IMG/VR virus record: IMGVR_UViG_3300049460_000128
Location: 232,595-296,594 of that record
Length of the DNA: 64,000 bases
Strand: one strand, 5' to 3'
The position numbers and the translations under genes were made by a program. Of this stretch, positions 10,916 through 56,183 are shown in pieces. Below the pieces are notes generated by a model. That model did no database searches. It saw nothing but the letters and a program-made list of their open reading frames with translations, and was not told the DNA's origin. How positions within the stretch are numbered: the first letter of the stretch is position 1; every line of letters begins with the position of its first letter.

Positions 10916-13222
10916 TTAAGCCGCTACCGCGACTGATTTGAAGCTGTCCAGCTTAATCTCGCCGTTTTCCAACACGACATTCACAACCGAACCTTGGCCC
11001 AATTGATCGAAGATCATAGCTTTACTGAGCGGCTTCTTGACCTTGTCTTGAATCAGACGGTCAAGTGGGCGGGCGCCCATCGCCGGATCGTAGCCCTTGT
11101 CGGCCAGATAACCCAGTGCTTCGTCGCTGAAGTTCAGCGTGATGCCTTTTTGACCAACTTTGTCCACCACCACTTTGATGAACTTATTGACAATTTTCAG
11201 CATGTTGGTGCGGCCCAAAGCTTTGAAGCGCACGATTGCATCCAGACGATTGCGGAACTCTGGAGAGAACAAACGATTCACCACATCCTTGTCTTCGTCT
11301 GCGCGATCCTGCATTGCAAAACCCAACGGAGCCTTGGCTGCATCACTAGCACCCGCGTTACTGGTCATGATGACAATAACTTGATTGAATGGTACCATCT
11401 TACCAGCACTATTCGTCAGCTCGCCGTGATCAAACACTTGCAGGAACAAGTTGAAGATATCCGGATGCGCCTTTTCAACTTCGTCGAGCAGCAGCACGCA
11501 GCTTGGCGTCTTTTCAATCGCATTCACGAGCAAGCCATTGCCAGCACCGCCTTCGCCGTAACCCACGTAGCCAGGAGCCGCGCCGATCAGTTTGGCAACC
11601 GAGTGTTTTTCCATGTATTCGCTCATATCGAAGCGAACGATTGGCAATGACAGCGATTCAGCCAAGATCTTGGCGGTTTCAGTTTTACCGACACCAGTAG
11701 GGCCAGTGAACAGGTATGCGCCGGCGGTCTTGTTGTCGTCACGCAGACCAGCACGAGCAACAATCACGCCGTCATTCAGGGTTTCCAGTGCGCCATCTTG
11801 ACCCATTACACCAGCTTGCAACTTGCTTTGCAGCTTCAGCAGAACTTCGCGCTCATCGCCGTCGATGTTTTCAACTGGGATATGGGCTACTTTGCTGACT
11901 TCCACCTGGATGAGTTCCGAGGTGATGACCGTGGCTTTGTCAGCGTCCTTGACACGTTGGCGCGAACCAGCAGCATCCAGAATGTTGATAGCTTTGTCAG
12001 GCAGTTTCTGGCTTGGCATGAAACGAGCAGTCAGGTCAACTGCTTTATCCAGGGCTTCGTCCGTAAAGGTGACGCCGTGGAAAGCTTCGTACGATGCACG
12101 CAGACCACGCAGGATCAGTTTGCAATTTTCAATCGAAGGCTCGTTGACGTCCAGCTTGTGGAAGCGGCGCATCAGGGCGCGATCTTTCTCGAAATACTTG
12201 CGGTATTCTTCGTAAGTGGTCGAGCCGATGCAACGCAGTTTGCCTTTTGCCAAAGCCGGTTTCAGCAGATTGGCAACGTCCATGCCGCCCTGATTACTAC
12301 CCGCACCAGCACCCATGATCATGTGGATCTCGTCGATGAACAGGATTGGATCTTCGATGAACGACAGCGCTTGCAGGACGTGTTTCATGCGCTCTTCGAA
12401 GTCACCGCGGAACTTTGTGCCGGCGATCAGGTTGCCGATTTCCAGACTGTACACGACACTGTCGCGGATGATCGATGGGACTTTGCCCTGGACAATCATG
12501 TGGGCCAGACCTTCAGCAATGGCGGTCTTACCAACACCAGGATCGCCGACCATGATGACGTTATTGGAGCGACGACGTGCAGTGATCTGGATGATTTCTG
12601 CAACTTCGTTTTCACGGCCGATAACAGGATCGATGTCGCCGTTTGCTGCTACTTCGTTGAGGTTGATCGTGTACTTGGCCAGGAACGCGACAGCTTCGTC
12701 TTTGTTCGTGATGTCTTTTTGGCGCACTTCGCCGTCAGGACCACGCTGGACGTTTGGTTGACCTTGTGGGCTTGCTTCTTGTTCGCTGGCACCGAAGTAT
12801 TCTTTCAGACTCAGCGGATCGAGGCCGATCTTGTGCAGGAAGTGGGCGGCATGACTGTCGTCTTGTTCGGCCACACCCAGCAGCAAGTCAGCAGCGGTTG
12901 CTTGTTTGCGCTTGGTGAACATCGCATGGGCAACGACGTGTTGAACAGTGTTGCCCAACGTTTCGGTTTGGCGAACTTGCCAATTGGCAGGGGCTTGGGG
13001 AATGAATGGACCTTCCATGTAGTCGGTCAGGATACCACGCAGGTCATCTTGATCGATTTGGAAAGATTCGAAGATCGTTTTTACTTCTTGTTCTTCGATC
13101 AATGCAAACAGCAAGTGTTCTTGTGTTACGTATTCGTGGTCATACTTCCGTGCAAGCTCAAATGCTGCGCGCACGATGCGTATCGCCTCGGCGTTGTCAA
13201 ACTCCGTGGATTTATTGCTCAT
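10916..13222 (-). CDS. clpA: ClpA-like AAA+ chaperone/unfoldase
   Basis: Clp N domain; Walker A GDPGVGKT and GPTGVGKT; KFRGDFEER; RFDMSEYMEKHSV; PEFRNRLD. Confidence 0.95.
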   Translation of the reverse strand: MSNKSTEFDNAEAIRIVRAAFELARKYDHEYVTQEHLLFALIEEQEVKTIFESFQIDQDDLRGILTDYMEGPFIPQAPANWQVRQTETLGNTVQHVVAHAMFTKRKQATAADLLLGVAEQDDSHAAHFLHKIGLDPLSLKEYFGASEQEASPQGQPNVQRGPDGEVRQKDITNKDEAVAFLAKYTINLNEVAANGDIDPVIGRENEVAEIIQITARRRSNNVIMVGDPGVGKTAIAEGLAHMIVQGKVPSIIRDSVVYSLEIGNLIAGTKFRGDFEERMKHVLQALSFIEDPILFIDEIHMIMGAGAGSNQGGMDVANLLKPALAKGKLRCIGSTTYEEYRKYFEKDRALMRRFHKLDVNEPSIENCKLILRGLRASYEAFHGVTFTDEALDKAVDLTARFMPSQKLPDKAINILDAAGSRQRVKDADKATVITSELIQVEVSKVAHIPVENIDGDEREVLLKLQSKLQAGVMGQDGALETLNDGVIVARAGLRDDNKTAGAYLFTGPTGVGKTETAKILAESLSLPIVRFDMSEYMEKHSVAKLIGAAPGYVGYGEGGAGNGLLVNAIEKTPSCVLLLDEVEKAHPDIFNLFLQVFDHGELTNSAGKMVPFNQVIVIMTSNAGASDAAKAPLGFAMQDRADEDKDVVNRLFSPEFRNRLDAIVRFKALGRTNMLKIVNKFIKVVVDKVGQKGITLNFSDEALGYLADKGYDPAMGARPLDRLIQDKVKKPLSKAMIFDQLGQGSVVNVVLENGEIKLDSFKSVAVAA

Positions 13223-13256
13223 TAGTTTTCCTTATGCTGGCCCGTTTTGCTTCTCT

Positions 13257-13676
13257 TCACCTGCCATTCTTGCGATATTGCAGATTGGCTTGGTATATAC
13301 TGTTAGCCAGTGTAACACCTGCTTGTAGTTTGTCAAGGCAGAATTTGCCATTTCCTAAAAAAATGGCATGATGGATTTGGTCACGATATGGCGTCAGTTC
13401 GCGCTGAATGAGCGACACAATTGCTTGACGGTCGCTGTGACGAACAAAGTAGCCAGATTGGGATTTAGTTTCGAGACCATACAGCTCGCCATTTATCTCC
13501 TCAACACGCTGGTCGAGATCATGTTCGGCATCGATGCAAGTTTGAGCACCGCGTTGCGATTGGCGAACAACACCGTCATTTACACCCTGGGCAATGGGAA
13601 TGCCAGCTTCGTTGTACTGTTGCGCCCATACAACTTCTGGCAATGCCAGGGCTAACAGCAAAATGACAGATTTCAT
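13257..13676 (-). CDS. Secreted hypothetical protein
   Basis: RBS GGAG; signal-peptide-like MKSVILLLALALPEVVWA; sigma70 -35 TTGATT at 13729-13734. Confidence 0.7.
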   Translation of the reverse strand: MKSVILLLALALPEVVWAQQYNEAGIPIAQGVNDGVVRQSQRGAQTCIDAEHDLDQRVEEINGELYGLETKSQSGYFVRHSDRQAIVSLIQRELTPYRDQIHHAIFLGNGKFCLDKLQAGVTLANSIYQANLQYRKNGR

Positions 13677-13730
13677 TTGTGTGCTCCAGTATATCGTAAT
13701 ACCACATTGTTGCACACAAATGAATAAAAA

Positions 13731-14663
13731 TCAACTACTTAATGAGTCGCGAATGTCAACAAGTTCAAGTATCTGAGCATCAGTCAATTGCATGATATCT
13801 GGAACCACTGACACAAACTCAATAAACATGTCACCACGACGGCTAGCATGTTGGATGTTCATGCCATGATTTGGAATACGAATTTTGGAATGGGGCTGAG
13901 TGCCGGCACGAACTTGAACGAGCAGCTTCTTACCATCAATGGTCGGTACAGTAAGTTCAGTACCAATCATCAAATCCAAGACATTGATTTTTTGCAAGAA
14001 TGTAATCGTGCTATCTTCACGCAAAAACTGTTCATGCTTAGTAACATGGATGGTCACATACAAGTCGCTGATCTTCACATTGGCATGTTGCCGCCAACCA
14101 CCACCCTTACAACGAACTTGTTGACCGTCGTTAATACCAGGCGGAATGGTAACTTGCACCGTGATTGGTGTGAGATTGGACGTATTGTAGAACCGTGATG
14201 ACGCCGATGGCTTTGGAACATACGTGACATTACTGACAATGCCCGTATGTGCTTCTTCCAACGTAATATTAACGTCAACGAACTGGTCAGGATTTACCTT
14301 GTTACCCCAGTCGCTATAGTCATCTTGCGGGTAGGCTTTGCTATGACGACGCAGCAGTTCATCAATATCGTCAAAGTCGCCGCGCTTGGACTCCCAGGCT
14401 TCCTTGAAGTAGTCGGCCGAATCCCAGGAACGAGTACTGGCACGTGGTCTCGTGCTGCGATCATATGTATCACGCTTATCTGGGTCAGTCAAGACCTCAT
14501 ATGACTCTTTGATTTGTTTGAACTTATCTTCTGCGCCTGCATCCGAATTGCGATCCGGATGGTATTTCATGGCGAGCTTGCGATATGCTTTTTTGATTTC
14601 ATCCTCGGTTGCCGTTTTGGCTACACCGAGGATTTCGTAGTGATCATTTTTTTGTTGTGTCAT
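13731..14663 (-). CDS. dnaJ: DnaJ/CbpA-type co-chaperone (no Zn finger)
   Basis: DHYEILGV...[17 protein letters not shown]-domain plus DnaJ C-terminal domain. Confidence 0.92.
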
Positions 14664-15030
14664 TCTGATCTTTCGGGGTGGTATCACGACGAAGGTTGAT
14701 AACACCTGTTGTATATTGGATCACAGATTTCTGCTCCAAAATATACCGTTGCATTTCGTCAAGGTTGCCAGTCAAATTTTGGAGATTGTCTTGGTCCAGT
14801 GAGTATAGCACGATGGTTGCCGTCTTGTCTGTTAGCAGCTTTTCTAATTCTGGTCTAGTCAAAATAACCCAATTAACTGGCTTCAAAACCATAGGCTGTG
14901 CGGTTGGGATTGACGCAATGTCACCAATTGGCTGTGGGACAATCACAACTTCTGGCTTCTTGGTCTCCCACAATGCACATCCACTAAGACCGAACAGCAA
15001 TATGAATATGGCTAGAATTTTACTTACCAT
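14644..15030 (-). CDS. Outer-membrane spanin (o-spanin, lipoprotein)
   Basis: Lipobox LSGC, Pro-rich segment, overlaps the i-spanin 3' end. Confidence 0.75.
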
Positions 15031-15457
15031 TTTGAACACCCTTCGTGGCAGTATTGAGCTTGTCAAAGTAATCATTGAACGACTTGTTCAATTGATTTTG
15101 CGAGTCCTTAACGTTAGACGTAACTTGTGTTTTGAACTTAGACGAATTGACCACATTCGACAACGCATTGGCATTGGCGCGAATGTTCGTCAACTGAACG
15201 TTGAAGGTGTCATTCAGCTCTTTGATGCTCTTGATGTCAGACGCCAATACTTCATTTGCTGCTTTGATCTGTGTGTTTTGTTCTTGCAAACTGGCAATGA
15301 TGGCCTTGTTGGATTCAACGGTGGCTTTCATATTTTCCAGATATGAATACAAGAAAAATACGCCGCCAAGAATCAATCCAATACCAATAATCCAAGGCAA
15401 AAACTGCTTCAGATATTTGCCTATTGTGTTTGATGCAAACCATTCAAGTAGAAACAT
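15020..15457 (-). CDS. Inner-membrane spanin (i-spanin)
   Basis: N-terminal TM helix followed by a long coiled coil; directly upstream of the lipoprotein. Confidence 0.75.
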   Translation of the reverse strand: MFLLEWFASNTIGKYLKQFLPWIIGIGLILGGVFFLYSYLENMKATVESNKAIIASLQEQNTQIKAANEVLASDIKSIKELNDTFNVQLTNIRANANALSNVVNSSKFKTQVTSNVKDSQNQLNKSFNDYFDKLNTATKGVQNGK

Positions 15458-26347: not shown

Positions 26348-26563
26348 ATGATACCCCTTTGTACCTATATCCTACTCTCACTCGTAAGCTTCATTTATCT
26401 ACTGGTCAAATATAACAGCTGGTTTCTCAACATCTTCCGCAAGTGGAATAAACAGAACGCCAAGTTTATTCTCATGGTTGCAACTTTCATCTACATAATA
26501 TCGCCAGTCGTATCTGTGATTGAAATCACAAACGCTATCTGGCAATATCAGAAATCCCTATAA
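26348..26563 (+). CDS. Small two-TM membrane protein
   Basis: Two hydrophobic segments; promoter TTGCTA-17-TACACT just upstream. Confidence 0.65.
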   Translation: MIPLCTYILLSLVSFIYLLVKYNSWFLNIFRKWNKQNAKFILMVATFIYIISPVVSVIEITNAIWQYQKSL

Positions 26564-48903: not shown

Positions 48904-51090
48904 ATGATCCTGAACCAAAACAATCGTAACATTGAACGTGGTGGCATTCGTGTCGAACGCGAGGCAACCATTGTCGCAGATGCAGTGGCATTCAAAGTTC
49001 TGTCTGACATGCTGTATCCTGACAAACCACTCGCAATCATCCGCGAGCTGATGTGCAATGCGTACGATTCTCATACGGCTGCTGGTAAGCCCGATGAGCC
49101 TGTTCATATCCACTTGCCTAACGTTATGGAGCCATATCTGAGCATCCGTGACTTCGGCTTGGGTCTGAGCTTCCGTGACGCCTGCGTGCTTATGCTGACG
49201 TACTTCAAAAGTACCAAGCGTGAAGACAATAAAGTGACTGGTGCATTGGGTCTGGGTTCCAAAACACCATTCAGCTATGTGGACTCCTACACTGTGACCA
49301 CTCGCTTCAACGGTCGCAAGTTTACCTTCAATGCGTTCATCAACGAAAACGGCAATCCAGCAATGGCGCTGTTGGCACGTGAACGCACGACTGAAGGTAA
49401 TGGCCTGGAAATTATGGTGCCAGTTCGTCGCTCAGATTTCCATGTGTTTGAAGATCGTGCCCGCACTGTTCTGGAATGGTTCCGTGTGCCACCGGTAGTG
49501 AGCGGCAACAAAGATTTCAAGATCAATCGTACTGAATACGAACTGTTTGGTTCGACTTGGAAAATCGGCAAGCAACAAGGCTACTGGGGCTATAATGGCA
49601 CCGCCTATGCAATCCAGGGCAACATCGCATATCCGATCAATCCGGCGAGTATGCCAACCCTGCCCGCAGGCTATGCTGAACTGCTGCGCATGCCGATCTA
49701 CATGGAGTTTCCGATTGGTCAAATCAGCTTCACGGCTGGTCGCGACGCAATCTCGTATGACAAAGCAACGGTTGCAAACCTCATTGCTGGTCTGGATGTT
49801 GTGGTCAAGGAATTGCCAGAACAGTCGCAGGTCAAGTTTGATGCATGCAAGACTAAATGGGAAGCCCATGCTCTGTATGGCGAACTGATCAACGATAGCA
49901 TGAGTGGTTCGATCATTCGTGTTCTGAATCAGCACAAGAAGCTGTCGTTCAAATGGGGCGGTGAAGAGATCAAGACCTCGACGGTTACGATCACGATGAA
50001 GTCATATAAAGATCCAGTTATCACCGCACTGTGGGGTGGTGGTTCGCGCTCGAAGCGTTATGCCAATACTGATCCGATCAATATCACGGCTAACGCCAAG
50101 ACTGTCTTCTACATTGACGACATGTCAAAGGGCGCAGTCACCCGCATGCGTTCGTGGCGCTATGCCAACAACCCATCGTATGACCTGTATCTGCTTGGCA
50201 CTGATACGAAAGAAGTTGATGTAAAGCGTGTGGCCATTGATGCAATGCTGGAAGAACTGGGCAATCCTCCGTTTATCCTGGCTAGCACTTTGCCACCGAA
50301 AAAACGTAATCCGGCCAATCTGCTGAGCAAGAAGACCAACAAGGTTCTGACTGTTGATAGCAAGAGCTATTACAACAACAATTTCTCAGAGTCAACTGAC
50401 GACATTGATATTGAAGAGGGTGGTTACTATGTGCCAGTTTCGCGTCAAAAAGTAATCGACGACAAAGGGGTGGCATATACGAATTTCAGCGCAATGATTC
50501 GTCAAGCAGCGATCATGAAACTGATTCCAGAAGGTACTGAAATTGTGGCCGTTAACCCGTCCCAATTGAAGAAGTTTACCGATAATGAAGATTGGGTGAA
50601 TGCGGTTGATCACATCAAAGAAGCATTTATCGCTGACATGAAAACCAACAATGTCCTTGACGCAATTGCCGCTGCGACTGATTACCAGACATTGCGTTAC
50701 ACCAATGCCAACTACTACTACAATGCGCTGAATGGCGTATCGGTACTGGTGCAGAAGATGGCAAATGATCATCCACTGCGGGTGTTTGTTGATCAATGCA
50801 CGATGCAAGTTAAATCCAGCAAGGTGACTGATGTTAGCACCATGATGACCATGAGTAACTGGTTGAACTTGCAACTGGATGTTAATGGCGGCACGGCCAA
50901 GTATAAGTTCACGGCCGAATGGGATAAAATTCAAGCTCAGTATCCAATGCTGCGCCTGATCAATTATCCGGATGCCAACAACATTAAGACGGCTCTTAAA
51001 TACGTTCAGGATATGGATCGCTTGGCAGAACTGGAAAAACCAGCTGTTACGGTGGTCACTATCCAGAAAGCACCAGCGACTCAACCTTAA
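48904..51090 (+). CDS. rIIA: rIIA-like protein (GHKL ATPase)
   Basis: AIIRELMCNAYDSH, IRDFGLGL, STKRED...GALGLGSKTPFSY; adjacent to rIIB. Confidence 0.92.
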   Translation: MILNQNNRNIERGGIRVEREATIVADAVAFKVLSDMLYPDKPLAIIRELMCNAYDSHTAAGKPDEPVHIHLPNVMEPYLSIRDFGLGLSFRDACVLMLTYFKSTKREDNKVTGALGLGSKTPFSYVDSYTVTTRFNGRKFTFNAFINENGNPAMALLARERTTEGNGLEIMVPVRRSDFHVFEDRARTVLEWFRVPPVVSGNKDFKINRTEYELFGSTWKIGKQQGYWGYNGTAYAIQGNIAYPINPASMPTLPAGYAELLRMPIYMEFPIGQISFTAGRDAISYDKATVANLIAGLDVVVKELPEQSQVKFDACKTKWEAHALYGELINDSMSGSIIRVLNQHKKLSFKWGGEEIKTSTVTITMKSYKDPVITALWGGGSRSKRYANTDPINITANAKTVFYIDDMSKGAVTRMRSWRYANNPSYDLYLLGTDTKEVDVKRVAIDAMLEELGNPPFILASTLPPKKRNPANLLSKKTNKVLTVDSKSYYNNNFSESTDDIDIEEGGYYVPVSRQKVIDDKGVAYTNFSAMIRQAAIMKLIPEGTEIVAVNPSQLKKFTDNEDWVNAVDHIKEAFIADMKTNNVLDAIAAATDYQTLRYTNANYYYNALNGVSVLVQKMANDHPLRVFVDQCTMQVKSSKVTDVSTMMTMSNWLNLQLDVNGGTAKYKFTAEWDKIQAQYPMLRLINYPDANNIKTALKYVQDMDRLAELEKPAVTVVTIQKAPATQP

Positions 51091-51147
51091 TTAGCAATCT
51101 ACACCATTGCTCTGTACCATTTACAACAACAATAACAAGGACACATT

Positions 51148-52446
51148 ATGGCAATTACAGCACGACTGATTACTGAATCATCGATCACCCTCATCATGAA
51201 CGGTAAGCAATACATCCTTACCGAAGACAATCACCAGCATTACACTGAACTGCGCAATGCACTGAAGAAAAACGACATTCCAACCATCGAACGTCTGATT
51301 GACCTGCCAAAGCAAATCAATCACTACGGCAATGGCAAAATCACCGTGGTTGATGGCGTGGTAATGTACAACGGCGATGAGCTGCACAACAGCTTGACCC
51401 GTCGTCTGCTTCGCCAGATGGACGAAGGCTTCGAGGTAACCTCCCTGATTAACTTCCTGGAGAACCTGATGAAGAATCCATCCATGGTTGCCCGTAAGGA
51501 ACTGTACGATTGGCTGGAAGAAAACAACAACCCAATCACCGAAGACGGCTGCTTCATCGCGTTCAAGAACGTGCAGAAGAACTACATGGACCACTACACG
51601 GGTACCATCCGCAATGCGATTGGTGATACTCCGAAAATGGATCGCGCATCAGTTGATGACAATCGTCACAACACTTGCTCGGCCGGTCTGCACTTTGCAT
51701 CCGAAAGCTACCTGCCACATTACACTGGTGGCGGCGAGAACAACCGCACCATGATTCTGAAAGTGAATCCAGCTGATGTCGTGTCAATCCCGGTTGACTA
51801 CAACCACGCGAAAGGTCGTTGCTGGACTTATGAAGTAATCGGCGAACTGGACGATGATGGCTTCCAGAAGTTCTACAAAACTGCGGTTCACGGTGCAACT
51901 CCAAATGCCCGCGAAGATGACCTGGTGGACGAGGTAGAAGAAGAAGTCGTGGCAGCACCAGTCAATGCGGCTGTAACGCCTGATCGTGTGTACATTGTTC
52001 GCAGCTACAACGACTATACCAATGGGGCCAACGTCACCAAGGTCGATGCTGAAGTTTACGAAGAAGGCAAGCGTGTAACTCTGGCTGCTGCCCGTAGCCT
52101 CGCCGAGTCCGTGATGGCACAAGAAGATGTTGATCGCGTGCGTATCATCGACTCGATCACTCAGGACACCATCCTGGTCTTCGAATATGAAGAAGTGACG
52201 GATGAAGTTGTTGAAGTTGCTGAAGCACCAAAAGCTGCTTGGCCTATGCCAACGGCTAAGCCAGCAGTGGCCCCAGCGAAAGCACCAGTCAAGGCAGCAA
52301 ATCCATTCGAAGGTCTGACCTTCACCAAGACGCAAGTGTGCGCGATCCTGGGCGTGGATATGGTTACTCTGGATGAAATGCTTGAAGATGGTACCAAAGT
52401 TGAGCGTGTTGTCCGTGGCGGCAAAGGCTTCGTAGTCATCAAGTAA
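51148..52446 (+). CDS. rIIB: rIIB-like protein
   Basis: FLENLMKNPS...ELYDWL...ITEDGCFIAFK; TCSAGLH; KVNPADVVSIPVDY...KGRC. Confidence 0.92.
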   Translation: MAITARLITESSITLIMNGKQYILTEDNHQHYTELRNALKKNDIPTIERLIDLPKQINHYGNGKITVVDGVVMYNGDELHNSLTRRLLRQMDEGFEVTSLINFLENLMKNPSMVARKELYDWLEENNNPITEDGCFIAFKNVQKNYMDHYTGTIRNAIGDTPKMDRASVDDNRHNTCSAGLHFASESYLPHYTGGGENNRTMILKVNPADVVSIPVDYNHAKGRCWTYEVIGELDDDGFQKFYKTAVHGATPNAREDDLVDEVEEEVVAAPVNAAVTPDRVYIVRSYNDYTNGANVTKVDAEVYEEGKRVTLAAARSLAESVMAQEDVDRVRIIDSITQDTILVFEYEEVTDEVVEVAEAPKAAWPMPTAKPAVAPAKAPVKAANPFEGLTFTKTQVCAILGVDMVTLDEMLEDGTKVERVVRGGKGFVVIK

Positions 52447-52582: not shown

Positions 52583-54316
52583 ATGAACGTGTTTTCGGAT
52601 AATCTGGCTGCACCATTCGATATGGCTGATGTGGTGGTCGCATACCTGAATCAACTGGAAGTTGAATACATCTTCGGAGTTCCAGGCGGTGCCATAGAAC
52701 CCCTCTACAATGCAATAGCTCGGCAAGAAAAACGCGGTGGCGTTCGCCACGTTCTCGCCCGCCACGAAACTGGGGCGGCATTCATGGCAGAAGGCTATGC
52801 GCGTGAAACTGGCAAACTGGGCGTCTGCTGTGCAACCTCCGGACCTGGTGTTACCAACATGATTACTGGTGTCGCCAATGCCAATGCCAACCGTGTGCCC
52901 GTGTTGGCAATCACCGGCCAACCATCCCTGAAGTCGTTCGGTCGTAACGCACTTCAAGAATCGTCCTGCACTGGCATCGATGTTGTAGCAATGATGAGTC
53001 ATTGCACGCAATACAGTACGTTGATATCGCACCCTGCTCAGATCGAAAACAAGTTCATCTCCGCAGTAAGTCATTCGTTGCGTGGGGCGCGTGGTGCGTC
53101 GCATCTGTCAGTGCCCAACGACATCTTCCGCATGCCGAGCGAACATGGTTCGCCACTCTACAAGCTGGAACGCGAACGTATGGTCAGTCACCACTACGCA
53201 CCCAGTGATGTGATTAATCTGTTCCACACCATCACCAACAGTCAGAATCCAGTCGTGTTGGTGGGCGCTCATGCGGGGCCAGCCATCCCCGAGATTATGA
53301 GTTTCGTCAAGGAGAACAATATTCCCTTCGTATCGACGCCTGACGGCAAAGGGTTTGTTGATATCAACAGTCCATTGTATTGCGGGGTGGTTGGCTTCAG
53401 CGGTCATCAATCGGCAATGGAAACCGTGAATGACCCAGCGGTAGACCTCCTGATTGCGATCGGGGCCACCATTGGTGAGTTGAATACCGGTGGCTGGTCA
53501 GCTGGTATCCTGAATGAGCACCTGGTCATCATCGACGAATGTGATCAAAATCTCATGCGGGCGCCAATGGCAAAGCTCCAGATGCATGGCAATACGTCAG
53601 CAATCATGCGTGGCTTGAATACCATGATCAACCTCATGCCCATGCGCTTCCGGGGCAATACGCATGGGCCCGTGACTATTACCGACTTCGTATGTTCGGT
53701 AAGCGACGATACACCAATCAAGCCCCAACGTTTGATGCGTGAGTTGAGCAGTATGTTCCCAAGCAACACTCGCTTTTTTGCCGATAATGGCAACAGCTTC
53801 TCGTGGGCCATCCATCATCTCAATCCAGGAATAATGACCTCCAATCATTTGAGCCGTGGCTGGTTGCATGTCACCACCGAGTTTGCTTCGATGGGTTGGG
53901 CAATCGGCACTTCAGTTGGGGCAGCAATGGCCAATCCAGAGTCCCCGGTCGTCTGCATTACTGGCGATGGTTCGATGCTGATGAGTGGTCAAGAGTTGTC
54001 CACTGCGGTAGCGGAACGCATCCCGATGATCTTCGTGGTGTTAAATGACAGCACCTTGGGGATGGTATATCATGGGCAGAAGATGGGCGGTGCTGAACCC
54101 ATAGCAACTGACATCCCGGTAACGAACTTTGCCGCGATCGCACAAGCAATGGGCGCGCAAAGCTTTGTGATTAACTCGGCCGTCGACCTGGAAGCTCTGA
54201 ATATCAAGGCGTTGTTGGCGCACAATGGCCCAACATTGCTGGATGTGCGGATCGACCGTGAAGAGGTTCCGCCCATGAAAAGCCGGGTGGCGGTATTGAC
54301 TGATACAGTTGAATAA
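52583..54316 (+). CDS. Thiamine-diphosphate-dependent enzyme, acetolactate-synthase-like superfamily
   Basis: IFGVPGG, catalytic ARHE, TSGPGVTN, ThDP motif GDGS-x23-ND, LLDVRID; RBS AGGAG. Confidence 0.93.
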   Translation: MNVFSDNLAAPFDMADVVVAYLNQLEVEYIFGVPGGAIEPLYNAIARQEKRGGVRHVLARHETGAAFMAEGYARETGKLGVCCATSGPGVTNMITGVANANANRVPVLAITGQPSLKSFGRNALQESSCTGIDVVAMMSHCTQYSTLISHPAQIENKFISAVSHSLRGARGASHLSVPNDIFRMPSEHGSPLYKLERERMVSHHYAPSDVINLFHTITNSQNPVVLVGAHAGPAIPEIMSFVKENNIPFVSTPDGKGFVDINSPLYCGVVGFSGHQSAMETVNDPAVDLLIAIGATIGELNTGGWSAGILNEHLVIIDECDQNLMRAPMAKLQMHGNTSAIMRGLNTMINLMPMRFRGNTHGPVTITDFVCSVSDDTPIKPQRLMRELSSMFPSNTRFFADNGNSFSWAIHHLNPGIMTSNHLSRGWLHVTTEFASMGWAIGTSVGAAMANPESPVVCITGDGSMLMSGQELSTAVAERIPMIFVVLNDSTLGMVYHGQKMGGAEPIATDIPVTNFAAIAQAMGAQSFVINSAVDLEALNIKALLAHNGPTLLDVRIDREEVPPMKSRVAVLTDTVE

Positions 54317-54321
54317 TTAGC

Positions 54322-54349
54322 AAAAAGGCCGCAGATTGCGGCCTTTTTT
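54322..54349. terminator. Bidirectional terminator between convergent genes
   Basis: A5-GGCCGCA-gat-TGCGGCC-T6; overlaps the PAS gene stop. Confidence 0.88.
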
Positions 54350-55277
54350 ATGAATTGATTTTCGTTAAATCTTTCAACGTCAACAAGCTAGATCGTCGAC
54401 CATCCCAAAGAATCATGGTACTCGACACCAACACGTCAACGCATTCGCCATCGGCTTTGGTGACCTTTACCAAATAGTTATGAGGTGATTCGTCACCTTG
54501 GATACGGCGATTGTGGCTGGCGGTTACCAATTCCTGATACTCGGCGGTAATGAAATTCCTCACCGGCTTGGCAATCATTTCTTCTTCCAGATACCCCAGG
54601 ATACAAGTCATTGCGGGATTGACTGCCACAACATGATGGTTGTCTACAACCATGATGCCATCAAAGCTTTGTTCGAAGATGCCACGATACCGTGACTCCT
54701 GCTCCAAGAGTAATTGCTGGACGGCCATGATCTTGGAGACGTCTTTGATCAAGAACAGAATCAAAGTTGAACCATCTTGGCGTTCAAATTGCGATACATT
54801 ACCATCAACCCAGATAGTATTGCCGTTCTTCAGTTTACCACGAATGAGTTCAATGTGATCATCATATAGCTCTGAACCATCTAAAGGTGATTGCGCGGTA
54901 AGGATGAACAGAATATCGTCCATGGAAAGCTTGCTGCCGTCTTCTCGAACAAACAGGTTACTGATACATTGGCCGATGATTTGAGATGCACTCCAGCCAA
55001 AGATAATCTCAGCAGCACGATTGAATGTAATGATGGTGCCGTCTGGTTTGCATACAATCAGGGCATCGTGCAGAAGCTTGGATGTGACTTCGATTTGTCG
55101 TATGCCGTCATCCAAGCGTCGTTTGAGTAAAGTAGTAACATCGTGCGCTGCATCAGCGGTCGACGTGGCAGCAGCCAATAAAGCTTGTTGGCTGTCACGT
55201 ACTTTAGCCATCATAGCTTCTTCGATTGTATTGTCTTCGACGGGCTTGGCCATCAAACTTTTGAACCAATTGAACAT
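54348..55277 (-). CDS. Tandem PAS-domain protein without output domain
   Basis: DALIVCKPDGTIITFNRAAEIIFGWSASQIIG and YRGIFEQSFDGIMVV...VNPAMTCILGY PAS signatures; N-terminal coiled coil; ends right after PAS2. Confidence 0.88.
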   Translation of the reverse strand: MFNWFKSLMAKPVEDNTIEEAMMAKVRDSQQALLAAATSTADAAHDVTTLLKRRLDDGIRQIEVTSKLLHDALIVCKPDGTIITFNRAAEIIFGWSASQIIGQCISNLFVREDGSKLSMDDILFILTAQSPLDGSELYDDHIELIRGKLKNGNTIWVDGNVSQFERQDGSTLILFLIKDVSKIMAVQQLLLEQESRYRGIFEQSFDGIMVVDNHHVVAVNPAMTCILGYLEEEMIAKPVRNFITAEYQELVTASHNRRIQGDESPHNYLVKVTKADGECVDVLVSSTMILWDGRRSSLLTLKDLTKINS

Positions 55278-55292
55278 AGTATCCCCAATGAG

Positions 55293-55538
55293 TTAAAGTT
55301 TGGCTTTGATTTCGTAGAGAACGATTTTCAGGCTGGTCAGTGCATCACTGAGGGACAGGTTGCCCTTGTAGTAATCGTCAATGATTTTTTCTATCTTGGC
55401 ATCCTTCTTAGTAACTTCACCAAGCAGGCGGCGACGTTCGTAGTATAGGAAGACGATGCCAATAACAAGAATTGCGATGATGGCAGAAGGTCCACCTTCG
55501 AACAATGCAGCGACTAATTTTTCCGTTATAGCATCCAT
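55293..55538 (-). CDS. Small single-TM protein (holin candidate)
   Basis: 81 aa; TM SAIIAILVIGIVFLYY then ERRRL; RBS GGAG; late promoter. Confidence 0.75.
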   Translation of the reverse strand: MDAITEKLVAALFEGGPSAIIAILVIGIVFLYYERRRLLGEVTKKDAKIEKIIDDYYKGNLSLSDALTSLKIVLYEIKAKL

Positions 55539-55541
55539 GGA

Positions 55542-55578
55542 TGATTCTCCGTATTTTCATTTATTTATTGGAGAATCA
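55542..55578 (-). promoter_or_regulatory. Late promoter in the loop of an RBS-sequestering hairpin
   Basis: Minus strand reads TGATTCTCC-a-ATAAATA-aatgaaaatac-GGAGAATCA-tcc-ATG. Confidence 0.75.
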
Positions 55579-55617
55579 CGAATGTTTAACCGTTGTTTTA
55601 ATCCAGGACCATAATGA

Positions 55618-55653
55618 GAAAAGCCCGGCTCTTGGGGCAGAGCCGGGCTTTTC
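55618..55653. terminator. Intrinsic terminator (15-bp inverted repeat)
   Basis: GAAAAGCCCGGCTCT / AGAGCCGGGCTTTTC. Confidence 0.85.
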
Positions 55654-55669
55654 TTGAGACGTTTCGTTG

Positions 55670-55963
55670 TTACATGAAACGCAATTTGAACAGAATTGCA
55701 TCCGAGTCATTGATGAACTCGAATGCGAGACCATGATAGTAAACCGATTCTGGCTTTACATCATACACCGTTGCCATGGTGAATTGAACAATCTGGTTTT
55801 CATGCAACCAGTTCTTCAAGATCTCTACGTTGTCTTCCTTACTTTTCGGAAGCAAGCAGGTCAGTCGCTTACCACGAAACTGACTTGCAGTGCGACGCAC
55901 TTGATCGACATTAATGCGGGTGCTCAAGGCTTGACGCCAGGTACAAGCTAATTTCATTTTCAT
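55670..55963 (-). CDS. FxDExDA-family small protein
   Basis: FEFINDSDAILFKLRFM; RBS AAGAAGGA. Confidence 0.8.
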   Translation of the reverse strand: MKMKLACTWRQALSTRINVDQVRRTASQFRGKRLTCLLPKSKEDNVEILKNWLHENQIVQFTMATVYDVKPESVYYHGLAFEFINDSDAILFKLRFM

Positions 55964-56183
55964 GCAGAATCCTTCTTAATGACTACAACACTACACGAAT
56001 CATGCAGTAAATGAAATTACTCTGCTGCATTAAAACCGACCACTTCTACCGTATTACTCGGCATTATTGGCCCCATTTCTTTAGTTGCTAAAGTTTGCAC
56101 AATTTCTGCAAGCAAGCAATATAACATTGCATTTGAGCACGCCGCAATGCTTTTACTAAATTTTTTTGACGTTCAACACGACA

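What the first reader, a model, noticed from the sequence alone, without database searches (positions are those of the whole stretch)
55293..55578. T4-style RBS-occluding hairpin enforces late-only translation of a holin candidate
Seen: a perfect 9-bp inverted repeat (55570-78 / 55542-50). Its 3' arm is the Shine-Dalgarno of the 81-aa TM gene and its loop holds the late promoter ATAAATA. Read-through RNA would hide the RBS, while late transcripts lack the 5' arm. Known: T4 uses this device for e (lysozyme), soc and gene 49. Inference: premature expression is toxic, as expected for a lysis gene. No holin is otherwise evident near the spanins at 14.6-15.5 kb.
Basis: partly seen in the sequence, partly recalled or inferred. 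Interest (0 to 1): 0.65.

Follow-up and report, generated by a model that had tools for sequence, protein, structure and literature searches.

The report
Late-only translation hairpin, jumbo phage
A jumbo phage hides the ribosome-binding site of a small membrane-protein gene in an RNA hairpin that only transcripts from its own late promoter escape, as phage T4 does for a few genes, but the gene is the fixed partner of a PAS sensor protein and is not shown to be a holin.

Summary
A perfect 9-bp inverted repeat (55570-78 / 55542-50, minus strand) pairs the GGAG Shine-Dalgarno of the 81-aa gene with a segment just upstream of an AATAAATA motif in the 19-nt loop.

The regulatory reading is well supported:
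- The contig encodes a gp55-like late sigma factor.
- [A/C]TAAATA is about 10-fold enriched upstream of ORFs, mostly virion genes.
- The stem covaries in six relatives: 5 of 10 pairs show double changes, and 0 of 500 shuffles reach the observed score.
- Opening the start region costs 11.7 kcal/mol more in read-through RNA than in RNA started at the late promoter. T4 e scores 11.6-14.6 and T4 49 scores 13.0 on the same measure.
- All 41 distinct leaders of the gene family carry TAAATA. 16 of 41 show at least 8 kcal/mol of occlusion, against 4 of 62 control late genes.

The holin reading is not supported:
- The protein matches no holin family.
- Its cytoplasmic tail is more conserved than its membrane helix.
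- A PAS-only protein gene follows it in 35 of 36 fully evaluated loci, often with overlapping stop and start, and in Phosso and Atu_ph07.
- It lies 40 kb from the spanins.

Transcript 5' ends and protein function remain untested.

The parts
55570..55578 (-). 5' arm of the hairpin (TGATTCTCC). It lies wholly upstream of the late-promoter motif, so it is present only in RNA that starts further upstream.
   Evidence: covariation
55562..55569 (-). AATAAATA, a gp55-type late-promoter-like motif in the hairpin loop, 23 nt before the ATG. The inferred start is near 55556; it has not been mapped.
   Evidence: gp55-like sigma
55542..55550 (-). 3' arm of the hairpin (GGAGAATCA), which contains the Shine-Dalgarno GGAG (55550-55547).
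55293..55538 (-). 81-aa gene. The protein has a short acidic N-terminus, one membrane helix (about residues 17-33) and a highly conserved helical cytoplasmic tail (KKDxKIEKIIDDYYKGNLxLxxALxSLKxVLYEIK).
54348..55277 (-). 309-aa PAS-only protein (a conserved N-terminal helix plus two PAS domains). It is the second gene of the operon, starts 15 nt after the stop of the 81-aa gene and has its own GGGGA Shine-Dalgarno.
55617..55654 (-). Intrinsic terminator (16-bp arms, a GC-rich core, then UUUUCUCAUU) after the upstream 97-aa gene. Relatives have a terminator at the same position with different sequence.
55584..55601 (-). TTAAAACAACGGTTAAAC, an 18-nt box just upstream of the 5' arm. 15 of its 18 positions, including the TTAAAACAACGGTT core, are identical in the six relatives. 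It occurs once in the contig. Its role is unknown.
55670..55963 (-). Upstream 97-aa gene with no TAAATA before it. It is the likely source of read-through RNA.
56118..56126 (-). TGTTATATT, an extended -10-like element conserved in five relatives. It is inferred to be a host-sigma-type (early) promoter for the 97-aa gene.
   Evidence: inference
54322..54348 (-). Terminator-like hairpin (12 pairs plus a T run) that closes the two-gene operon.

Best explanation
This is a T4-type switch that allows translation only late in infection, set at the head of a two-gene late operon.

RNA that enters from upstream carries both arms of the hairpin. Such RNA would come from the early-looking promoter of the 97-aa gene and leak through the terminator at 55617-55654. 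In it the Shine-Dalgarno of the 81-aa gene is locked in a 9-bp helix and ribosomes cannot start.

Late in infection the phage's gp55-like sigma factor starts transcription at AATAAATA inside the loop, near 55556. That RNA lacks the 5' arm, so the start region is open.

The gated gene encodes a single-pass membrane protein whose conserved cytoplasmic tail most likely works together with the PAS-only protein encoded next to it, as its membrane anchor or effector.

Shown here: the anatomy, the covariation, the energetics, the universal promoter motif and the gene pairing. Inferred: the transcription start, the existence of read-through RNA, the block of translation, and contact between the two proteins.
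For: - Perfect stem and fold, z = -3.3.
- Occlusion of 11.7 kcal/mol, reached by 0 of 400 shuffles. This is third of 37 TAAATA-preceded genes on the contig. T4 e scores 11.6 and 14.6, and T4 49 scores 13.0, on the same measure.
- Covariation in six distinct leaders: 89.8% of cells paired, 5 of 10 pairs changed on both sides, 0 of 500 shuffles reach the score, and slid controls give at most 51% paired. Five G-U cells fit RNA of the sense strand.
- A gp55-like sigma factor is present (phrog_12791, E = 2e-75).
- ATAAATA is 10-fold enriched within 100 nt upstream of ORFs, and TAAATA lies most often 20-39 nt from the start. 8 of 10 sampled downstream genes are virion genes.
- All 41 distinct family leaders have TAAATA 23-42 nt before the start. 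16 of 41 reach ddG of at least 8, against 4 of 62 control late genes (Fisher 6e-5, Mann-Whitney 3e-4), and the arm sequences are unrelated between lineages.
- A PAS gene follows on the same strand in 35 of 36 evaluated loci, often overlapping the stop codon. The same holds in Phosso and Atu_ph07.
- The T4 precedent is described in PMC3014915.
Against: - No transcript data exist: no RNA run was listed. The start site is assumed from the T4 rule of 6 nt after the motif.
- A strong terminator lies between the upstream gene and the hairpin, so read-through may be small.
- The motif matches 7 of 8 positions of the T4 consensus.
- One subfamily (L155-L170) and Phosso show no occlusion, so the device is not essential to the gene.
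- Family leaders are related, so the statistics overstate independence.
- ORFs and starts on the contig come from my own simple caller.
- No evidence of contact between the two proteins was obtained.
Confidence: 0.6

Rival explanations
1. The same hairpin switch exists, and the 81-aa protein is the phage's holin, kept silent early because it is lethal to the membrane.
For: - It is a small single-pass membrane protein with a charged tail and is expressed late.
- A language-model look-alike cluster is auto-named 'Holin' (0.91) and another carries Holin_BhlA (0.89).
- 3 of 145 family representatives give weak Holin_BhlA hits (best E = 1.4e-4).
- No holin is known in this phage group (Atu_ph07 paper).
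- No T-type holin is on the contig.
Against: - The window protein matches no holin family in Pfam or PHROGs.
- Invariant residues lie in the cytoplasmic tail, while the membrane helix varies.
- It is tied to a PAS protein, not to an endolysin.
- The spanins are 40 kb away.
- About 32 other small hydrophobic ORFs exist, including a 71-aa two-helix ORF with its own TAAATA.
- The T4 device also gates genes that are not lysis genes.
Confidence: 0.15
2. The inverted repeat is a chance by-product with no regulatory effect. The gene is simply a late gene with an ordinary leader.
For: - 9-bp or longer stems touch the start region of 21 of 404 ORFs.
- Part of the family has no occlusion.
- A terminator already shields the gene.
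Against: - Compensatory changes are seen at 5 of 10 pairs, and the slid controls fail.
- 0 of 400 shuffles reach the observed occlusion.
- Occlusion recurs with unrelated arm sequences in other lineages.
Confidence: 0.1
3. The hairpin acts mainly on transcription or RNA ends. It would be a second stop or a 3'-end stabiliser for upstream RNA, placed around the late promoter, rather than a block on ribosomes.
For: In L171, L151 and L148 the hairpin around TAAATA is GC-rich, and in L171 and L151 it is followed by a U run, like a terminator.
Against: In the window no U run follows the stem, which is followed by UCCAUGGAU. The 3' arm is exactly the Shine-Dalgarno, and a true terminator lies 40 nt upstream.
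Confidence: 0.08
4. The inverted repeat is a DNA operator for a dimeric regulator that flanks the late promoter.
For: The symmetric arms bracket the -10-like motif.
Against: Arm sequences change between relatives while complementarity is kept, and five cells are G-U pairs that would be C-A mismatches on the other strand. No other copy of the arms was looked for as a shared operator, and the late promoters listed on the contig show no common flanking repeat.
Confidence: 0.04

Closest known systems
T4 gene e (lysozyme) leader, and likewise T4 soc, 49 and I-TevI
   Same: The Shine-Dalgarno is sequestered in a helix in long transcripts. A gp55-type late promoter is placed so that late RNA lacks the 5' strand. 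The computed occlusion is equal (T4 e 11.6-14.6, T4 49 13.0, window 11.7 kcal/mol).
   Different: The host phage is a distant jumbo phage of the Atu_ph07/Phosso/Rak2-like group. The motif is AATAAATA. The gated gene belongs to an unrelated family. A terminator precedes the device. Nothing here has been tested experimentally.
Aeh1 mobE hairpin that sequesters the ribosome-binding site (cited in PMC3014915)
   Same: It is a translation-blocking hairpin in a T4-related phage outside the T-even core (reference list only).
   Different: It gates a homing endonuclease gene. I did not read or compare its sequence.
Holin_BhlA (PF10960) and other single-helix holins
   Same: Both have an N-terminal membrane helix followed by a charged helical tail in about 70-90 residues. 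A few weak hits occur among relatives.
   Different: The window protein has no hit. Conservation is concentrated in the tail. The gene is paired with a PAS gene and not with an endolysin.
Atu_ph07 gp048/gp049 and Phosso genes 453/452
   Same: They are direct homologues of the two-gene unit in cultured phages: an 81-aa protein (35% and 58% identity) followed by, or overlapping, a PAS-only protein.
   Different: They are annotated only as a hypothetical protein and a 'multi-sensor histidine kinase' or 'PAS S-box protein'. Phosso's leader shows no occlusion.

Membership tests
T4-type late-only translation hairpin (e, soc, 49, I-TevI) | The Shine-Dalgarno and/or start codon is paired in a helix in transcripts that start upstream. 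| tested here: met
   A 9-bp perfect stem covers GGAG. Opening cost is 15.6 kcal/mol in the long RNA.
T4-type late-only translation hairpin (e, soc, 49, I-TevI) | A late promoter is placed so that late RNA lacks the 5' strand. | tested here: met
   AATAAATA (55569-55562) lies in the loop, downstream of the whole 5' arm. Opening cost of the late RNA is 3.9 kcal/mol. This is by sequence only.
T4-type late-only translation hairpin (e, soc, 49, I-TevI) | The phage uses gp55-type late transcription from TATAAATA-like promoters. | tested here: met
   A gp55-like sigma factor is present. TAAATA is enriched upstream of ORFs, and 8 of 10 sampled TAAATA-preceded genes are virion genes. No gp45 match was found on the incomplete contig.
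T4-type late-only translation hairpin (e, soc, 49, I-TevI) | Earlier transcripts actually run into the gene. | tested here: inconclusive
   A conserved extended -10-like element lies upstream of the 97-aa gene, but a strong terminator intervenes and no RNA run was listed.
T4-type late-only translation hairpin (e, soc, 49, I-TevI) | The mapped late 5' end lies inside the hairpin, and translation is lower from long RNA. | not testable with these tools
   This needs 5'-end mapping and reporter or toeprint assays.
T4-type late-only translation hairpin (e, soc, 49, I-TevI) | The stem is maintained in relatives. | tested here: met
   There is covariation in six leaders, and occlusion recurs with other arm sequences in other lineages.
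Holin | A small membrane protein with at least one transmembrane helix and a charged C-terminal tail. | tested here: met
   There is one hydrophobic helix and a tail with 11 basic and 8 acidic residues.
Holin | Sequence membership of a described holin family (T holin PF11031, BhlA PF10960, or PHROG lysis families). | tested here: not met
   The window protein has no hit. No PF11031 match is on the contig. Only 3 of 145 relatives hit BhlA weakly.
Holin | Linkage to an endolysin or spanins. | tested here: not met
   The neighbours are the PAS gene, the 97-aa gene, a TPP enzyme and rIIB/rIIA. The spanins lie at 14644-15457.
Holin | Lethal membrane permeabilisation that releases endolysin. | not testable with these tools
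   This needs expression or complementation assays.
Small membrane protein plus PAS-only protein unit (undescribed) | The two genes are adjacent on one strand across the family. | tested here: met
   This holds in 35 of 36 evaluated loci. The stop and start overlap or lie within 3 nt in most of them, and exceptions carry a GIY-YIG insertion. It also holds in Atu_ph07 and Phosso.
Small membrane protein plus PAS-only protein unit (undescribed) | The two proteins make physical contact. | not tested
   No usable evidence was obtained (see Tried and rejected).

The most novel reading that the evidence does not exclude
The 81-aa protein is the missing holin, or another late membrane effector, of the Atu_ph07/Phosso-type jumbo phages. 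Its action is gated twice: by the RNA hairpin in time, and by the PAS-only partner that senses the host's redox or energy state. This would be a sensor-controlled lysis clock. The unit lies next to rIIA/rIIB in this clade.
Probability: 0.12. Interest if true: 0.85.

Novelty: new member of a known kind. Interest (0 to 1): 0.45.

Why it matters
The finding shows that the T4 device of placing a late promoter inside a hairpin that masks the ribosome-binding site is used far outside the T-even phages. It is kept by compensatory change and has arisen with unrelated arm sequences in many lineages of one gene family.

It also flags a conserved and wholly uncharacterised late unit, a small membrane protein plus a PAS-only sensor. 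The unit has about 170 family representatives at 50% identity and occurs in two cultured phages, Atu_ph07 and Phosso, where it could be tested. No holin has been identified in Atu_ph07, so the unit is one candidate among many.

Tried and rejected
- **Complex prediction.** A job with the 81-aa and PAS proteins gave no verdict. It is not used as evidence either way.
- **Box scans.** A scan of viral contigs for the 14-mer core of the conserved box returned only unrelated chance matches. A longer box-plus-promoter pattern found nothing in viral or metagenome contigs, so no extra close leaders were obtained that way.
- **RNA data.** No RNA sequencing run was listed.
- **Second hairpin.** A second inverted repeat spans the junction of the two genes (55254-61 / 55295-302). 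It is not significant (z = -0.9) and is not conserved, so I rejected it as a coupling device.
- **Database searches.** Megablast of the region against phages found nothing. No T4 gp45 match is on the contig.
- **Structure.** The AlphaFold model of the 81-aa protein is three helices (pLDDT 83). I did not run a fold search because so small an all-helical model would give meaningless matches.
- **Other holin candidates.** Pfam and PHROG scans of other small hydrophobic ORFs found no holin family either.

Full report
**Where the window lies.** The window is the last 64 kb of a 296.6-kb viral contig, estimated about 70% complete. Structural proteins near the finding resemble those of Sinorhizobium phage Phosso, Agrobacterium phage Atu_ph07 and the Rak2/121Q group at 28-34% identity. 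This is a jumbo myovirus only distantly related to T4.

**The observation.** On the minus strand the sequence reads ...cgTGATTCTCCaataaataaatgaaaatacGGAGAATCAtccATG.
- The arms are 55578-55570 and 55550-55542. They are perfectly complementary over 9 bp with a 19-nt loop.
- GGAG lies 8 nt before the ATG of the 81-aa ORF 55293-55538.
- The loop holds AATAAATA (55569-55562).
- The local fold is -17.9 kcal/mol, z = -3.3.

**Is TAAATA a late promoter in this phage?**
- The contig encodes a protein that matches the PHROG 'sigma factor for late transcription' (E = 2e-75) and weakly matches T4 gp55.
- ATAAATA is no more frequent on the contig than base composition predicts.
- Even so, 33 of its 51 copies lie in sense orientation within 100 nt upstream of an ORF, a 10-fold enrichment. 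TAAATA lies most often 20-39 nt from the start.
- Of ten such genes sampled, eight are virion genes: portal, sheath, baseplate hub, tape-measure-like, protease and fibre-like proteins. Two are ribonucleotide reductase subunits.
- The motif in the finding lies 23 nt from the ATG, in the commonest distance class.
- By the T4 rule (established knowledge; the review shows mapped ends just downstream of TATAAATA), the start would be near 55556. Whatever the exact base, the 5' arm lies wholly upstream of the -10-like element and cannot be part of that RNA.

**Is the stem more than chance?** A perfect stem of 9 bp or more touching a start region occurs at 21 of 404 ORFs on the contig. The raw repeat is therefore not remarkable, but only this gene and a gp25-like baseplate gene have TAAATA in the loop.

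I measured the free energy needed to open positions -14 to +3 in a read-through RNA (-80 to +20) and subtracted the same quantity for RNA started 6 nt after the motif.
- The window gives 15.6 - 3.9 = 11.7 kcal/mol.
- 400 dinucleotide shuffles of the upstream part gave mean 2.7, sd 1.9, and none reached 11.7.
- Among 37 TAAATA-preceded genes on the contig the gene ranks third. The gp25-like gene (15.8) and a 352-aa gene (12.9) rank higher, and all the others are at 7.6 or below.
- As positive controls, T4 e gives 11.6 and 14.6 for its two late promoters, and T4 49 gives 13.0.

**Conservation.** The word search found 29 homologues. Their contigs gave five further distinct leaders of the same architecture: terminator, box, 5' arm, promoter, Shine-Dalgarno. 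I scored a 10-pair structure on this alignment.
- 89.8% of cells pair.
- 5 of 10 pairs show changes on both sides, for example U-A, C-G and G-C at one pair.
- 0 of 500 shuffles reach the covariation score.
- Every slid register falls to 51% paired or less.
- Five cells are G-U, which fits an RNA of the sense strand rather than a DNA operator.

A scan of viral contigs with the family alignment added 31 loci.
- All 41 distinct leaders carry TAAATA 23-42 nt before the start.
- 16 of 41 have an occlusion difference of at least 8 kcal/mol, against 4 of 62 other TAAATA-preceded genes from the same loci and contig (Fisher 6e-5, Mann-Whitney 3e-4).
- The arm sequences are unrelated between lineages, and sometimes the 5' arm overlaps the promoter itself, as in T4 49.
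- One subfamily (L155-L170) and Phosso show none.
- In L171 and L151 the promoter-straddling hairpin looks like a terminator.
- The leaders are phylogenetically related, so these p-values are generous.

**Is there read-through RNA?** The 97-aa gene has no TAAATA upstream. It does have a conserved TGyTATATT element, an extended -10-like sequence, in five relatives. That suggests transcription by the host sigma factor early in infection. The terminator would stop most of this RNA, and the hairpin would silence what leaks through. This step is inference, because no RNA run was listed.

**What is the gated gene?**
- The 81-aa protein has one hydrophobic helix and is modelled as three helices, 2-14, 17-58 and 63-80. 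The ERRR stretch after the membrane helix predicts a cytoplasmic tail by the positive-inside rule.
- In 25 homologues all 15 invariant positions but one, G16, lie in the tail (K45 to I77), while the membrane helix varies.
- A profile search found 172 representatives at E of 0.001 or better, nearly all 78-95 residues long.
- Neither the window protein nor most relatives match any Pfam or PHROG family. 3 of 145 give weak Holin_BhlA hits, among other coiled-coil noise.
- Language-model look-alikes include a cluster auto-named 'Holin' (0.91) and a BhlA cluster (0.89). I treat these as leads only.

**The gene's context.** The next gene on the same strand is a homologous PAS-only protein in 35 of 36 evaluated loci, usually with overlapping or abutting stop and start. 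The exceptions carry a GIY-YIG endonuclease insertion. Atu_ph07 gp048/gp049 and Phosso 453/452 are the same unit. The PAS proteins have two to four PAS domains, no known output domain and a highly conserved N-terminal helix.

The spanins at 14644-15457 are real Rz-like spanins, but they lie 40 kb away. About 32 other small hydrophobic ORFs exist on the contig. The Atu_ph07 authors likewise found 40 membrane proteins and no holin.

**Verdict.** The regulatory device is a new member of a known kind and is as well supported as sequence analysis allows. The holin label is not supported. The protein is best described as the membrane partner of a late-expressed PAS sensor, with function unknown, and a PAS-controlled lysis role remains a minority possibility. 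Since the same T4 device gates soc, 49 and I-TevI, its presence says that early synthesis is disfavoured, not that the product lyses cells.

Noticed in passing
window 55584-55601 (-): TTAAAACAACGGTTAAAC lies between the terminator and the 5' arm. 15 of its 18 positions, including the TTAAAACAACGGTT core, are identical in all six close relatives, although the flanks and even the stem vary. It is unique on the contig, and L005 has a looser version (ATTAAAA...TTTAAAC). Its role is unknown; it could be a protein site or part of another promoter.
   Followed up: partly
G000:C1:134191-134580 (+) and G000:C1:7962-9020 (-), outside the window: Two more late genes have start-region hairpins built around or over TAAATA: a gp25-like baseplate wedge gene (PF04965; occlusion 15.8 kcal/mol) and a 352-aa gene (12.9). 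The device therefore seems to be used at least three times in this genome.
   Followed up: partly
window 52583-54316 (+) and its leader; G000:C1:194669-195583 (-): Start-proximal hairpins also occur with other promoter-like motifs in the loop. The TPP-enzyme gene has TTGACT...TATATT, and a 304-aa gene has CTCTATA, a 7-mer that is itself enriched upstream of ORFs. Placing a promoter inside a leader hairpin may be a general habit of this phage.
   Followed up: no
window 52583-54316 (+): A 577-aa thiamine-pyrophosphate enzyme of the acetolactate-synthase type (three TPP domains) sits between the PAS operon and rIIB. In the close relatives rIIB directly follows the PAS gene, so this looks like an inserted auxiliary metabolic gene.
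   Followed up: partly
window 48904-52446 (+): rIIA (728 aa) and rIIB (432 aa) homologues converge on the PAS operon. This neighbourhood is conserved in the close clade.
   Followed up: partly
window 26348-26563 (+): A 71-aa ORF has two hydrophobic helices, its own TAAATA 20 nt upstream and a leader hairpin (7.1 kcal/mol). It matches no family. By architecture it is at least as good a holin candidate as the 81-aa gene.
   Followed up: partly
L020:2774-3550 and L139:1844-2626: In two lineages a GIY-YIG homing endonuclease gene is inserted directly after the 81-aa gene. In L020 it separates that gene from the PAS gene.
   Followed up: no
window 10916-14705 (-): A ClpB/ClpA-like AAA+ chaperone (768 aa) and a full DnaJ homologue (324 aa) lie just downstream of the spanin pair, with a secreted 152-aa ORF between them.
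   Followed up: no
window 56118-56126 (-): A conserved TGyTATATT element (extended -10-like) lies about 150 nt upstream of the 97-aa gene in five relatives. It is a candidate early promoter, followed by a long conserved leader.
   Followed up: partly
L171, L151, L148 (leaders of family genes): In these lineages the late-promoter motif sits in the loop of, or overlaps, a GC-rich hairpin. In L171 and L151 a U run follows, so the hairpin looks like a terminator with a promoter inside it.
   Followed up: no
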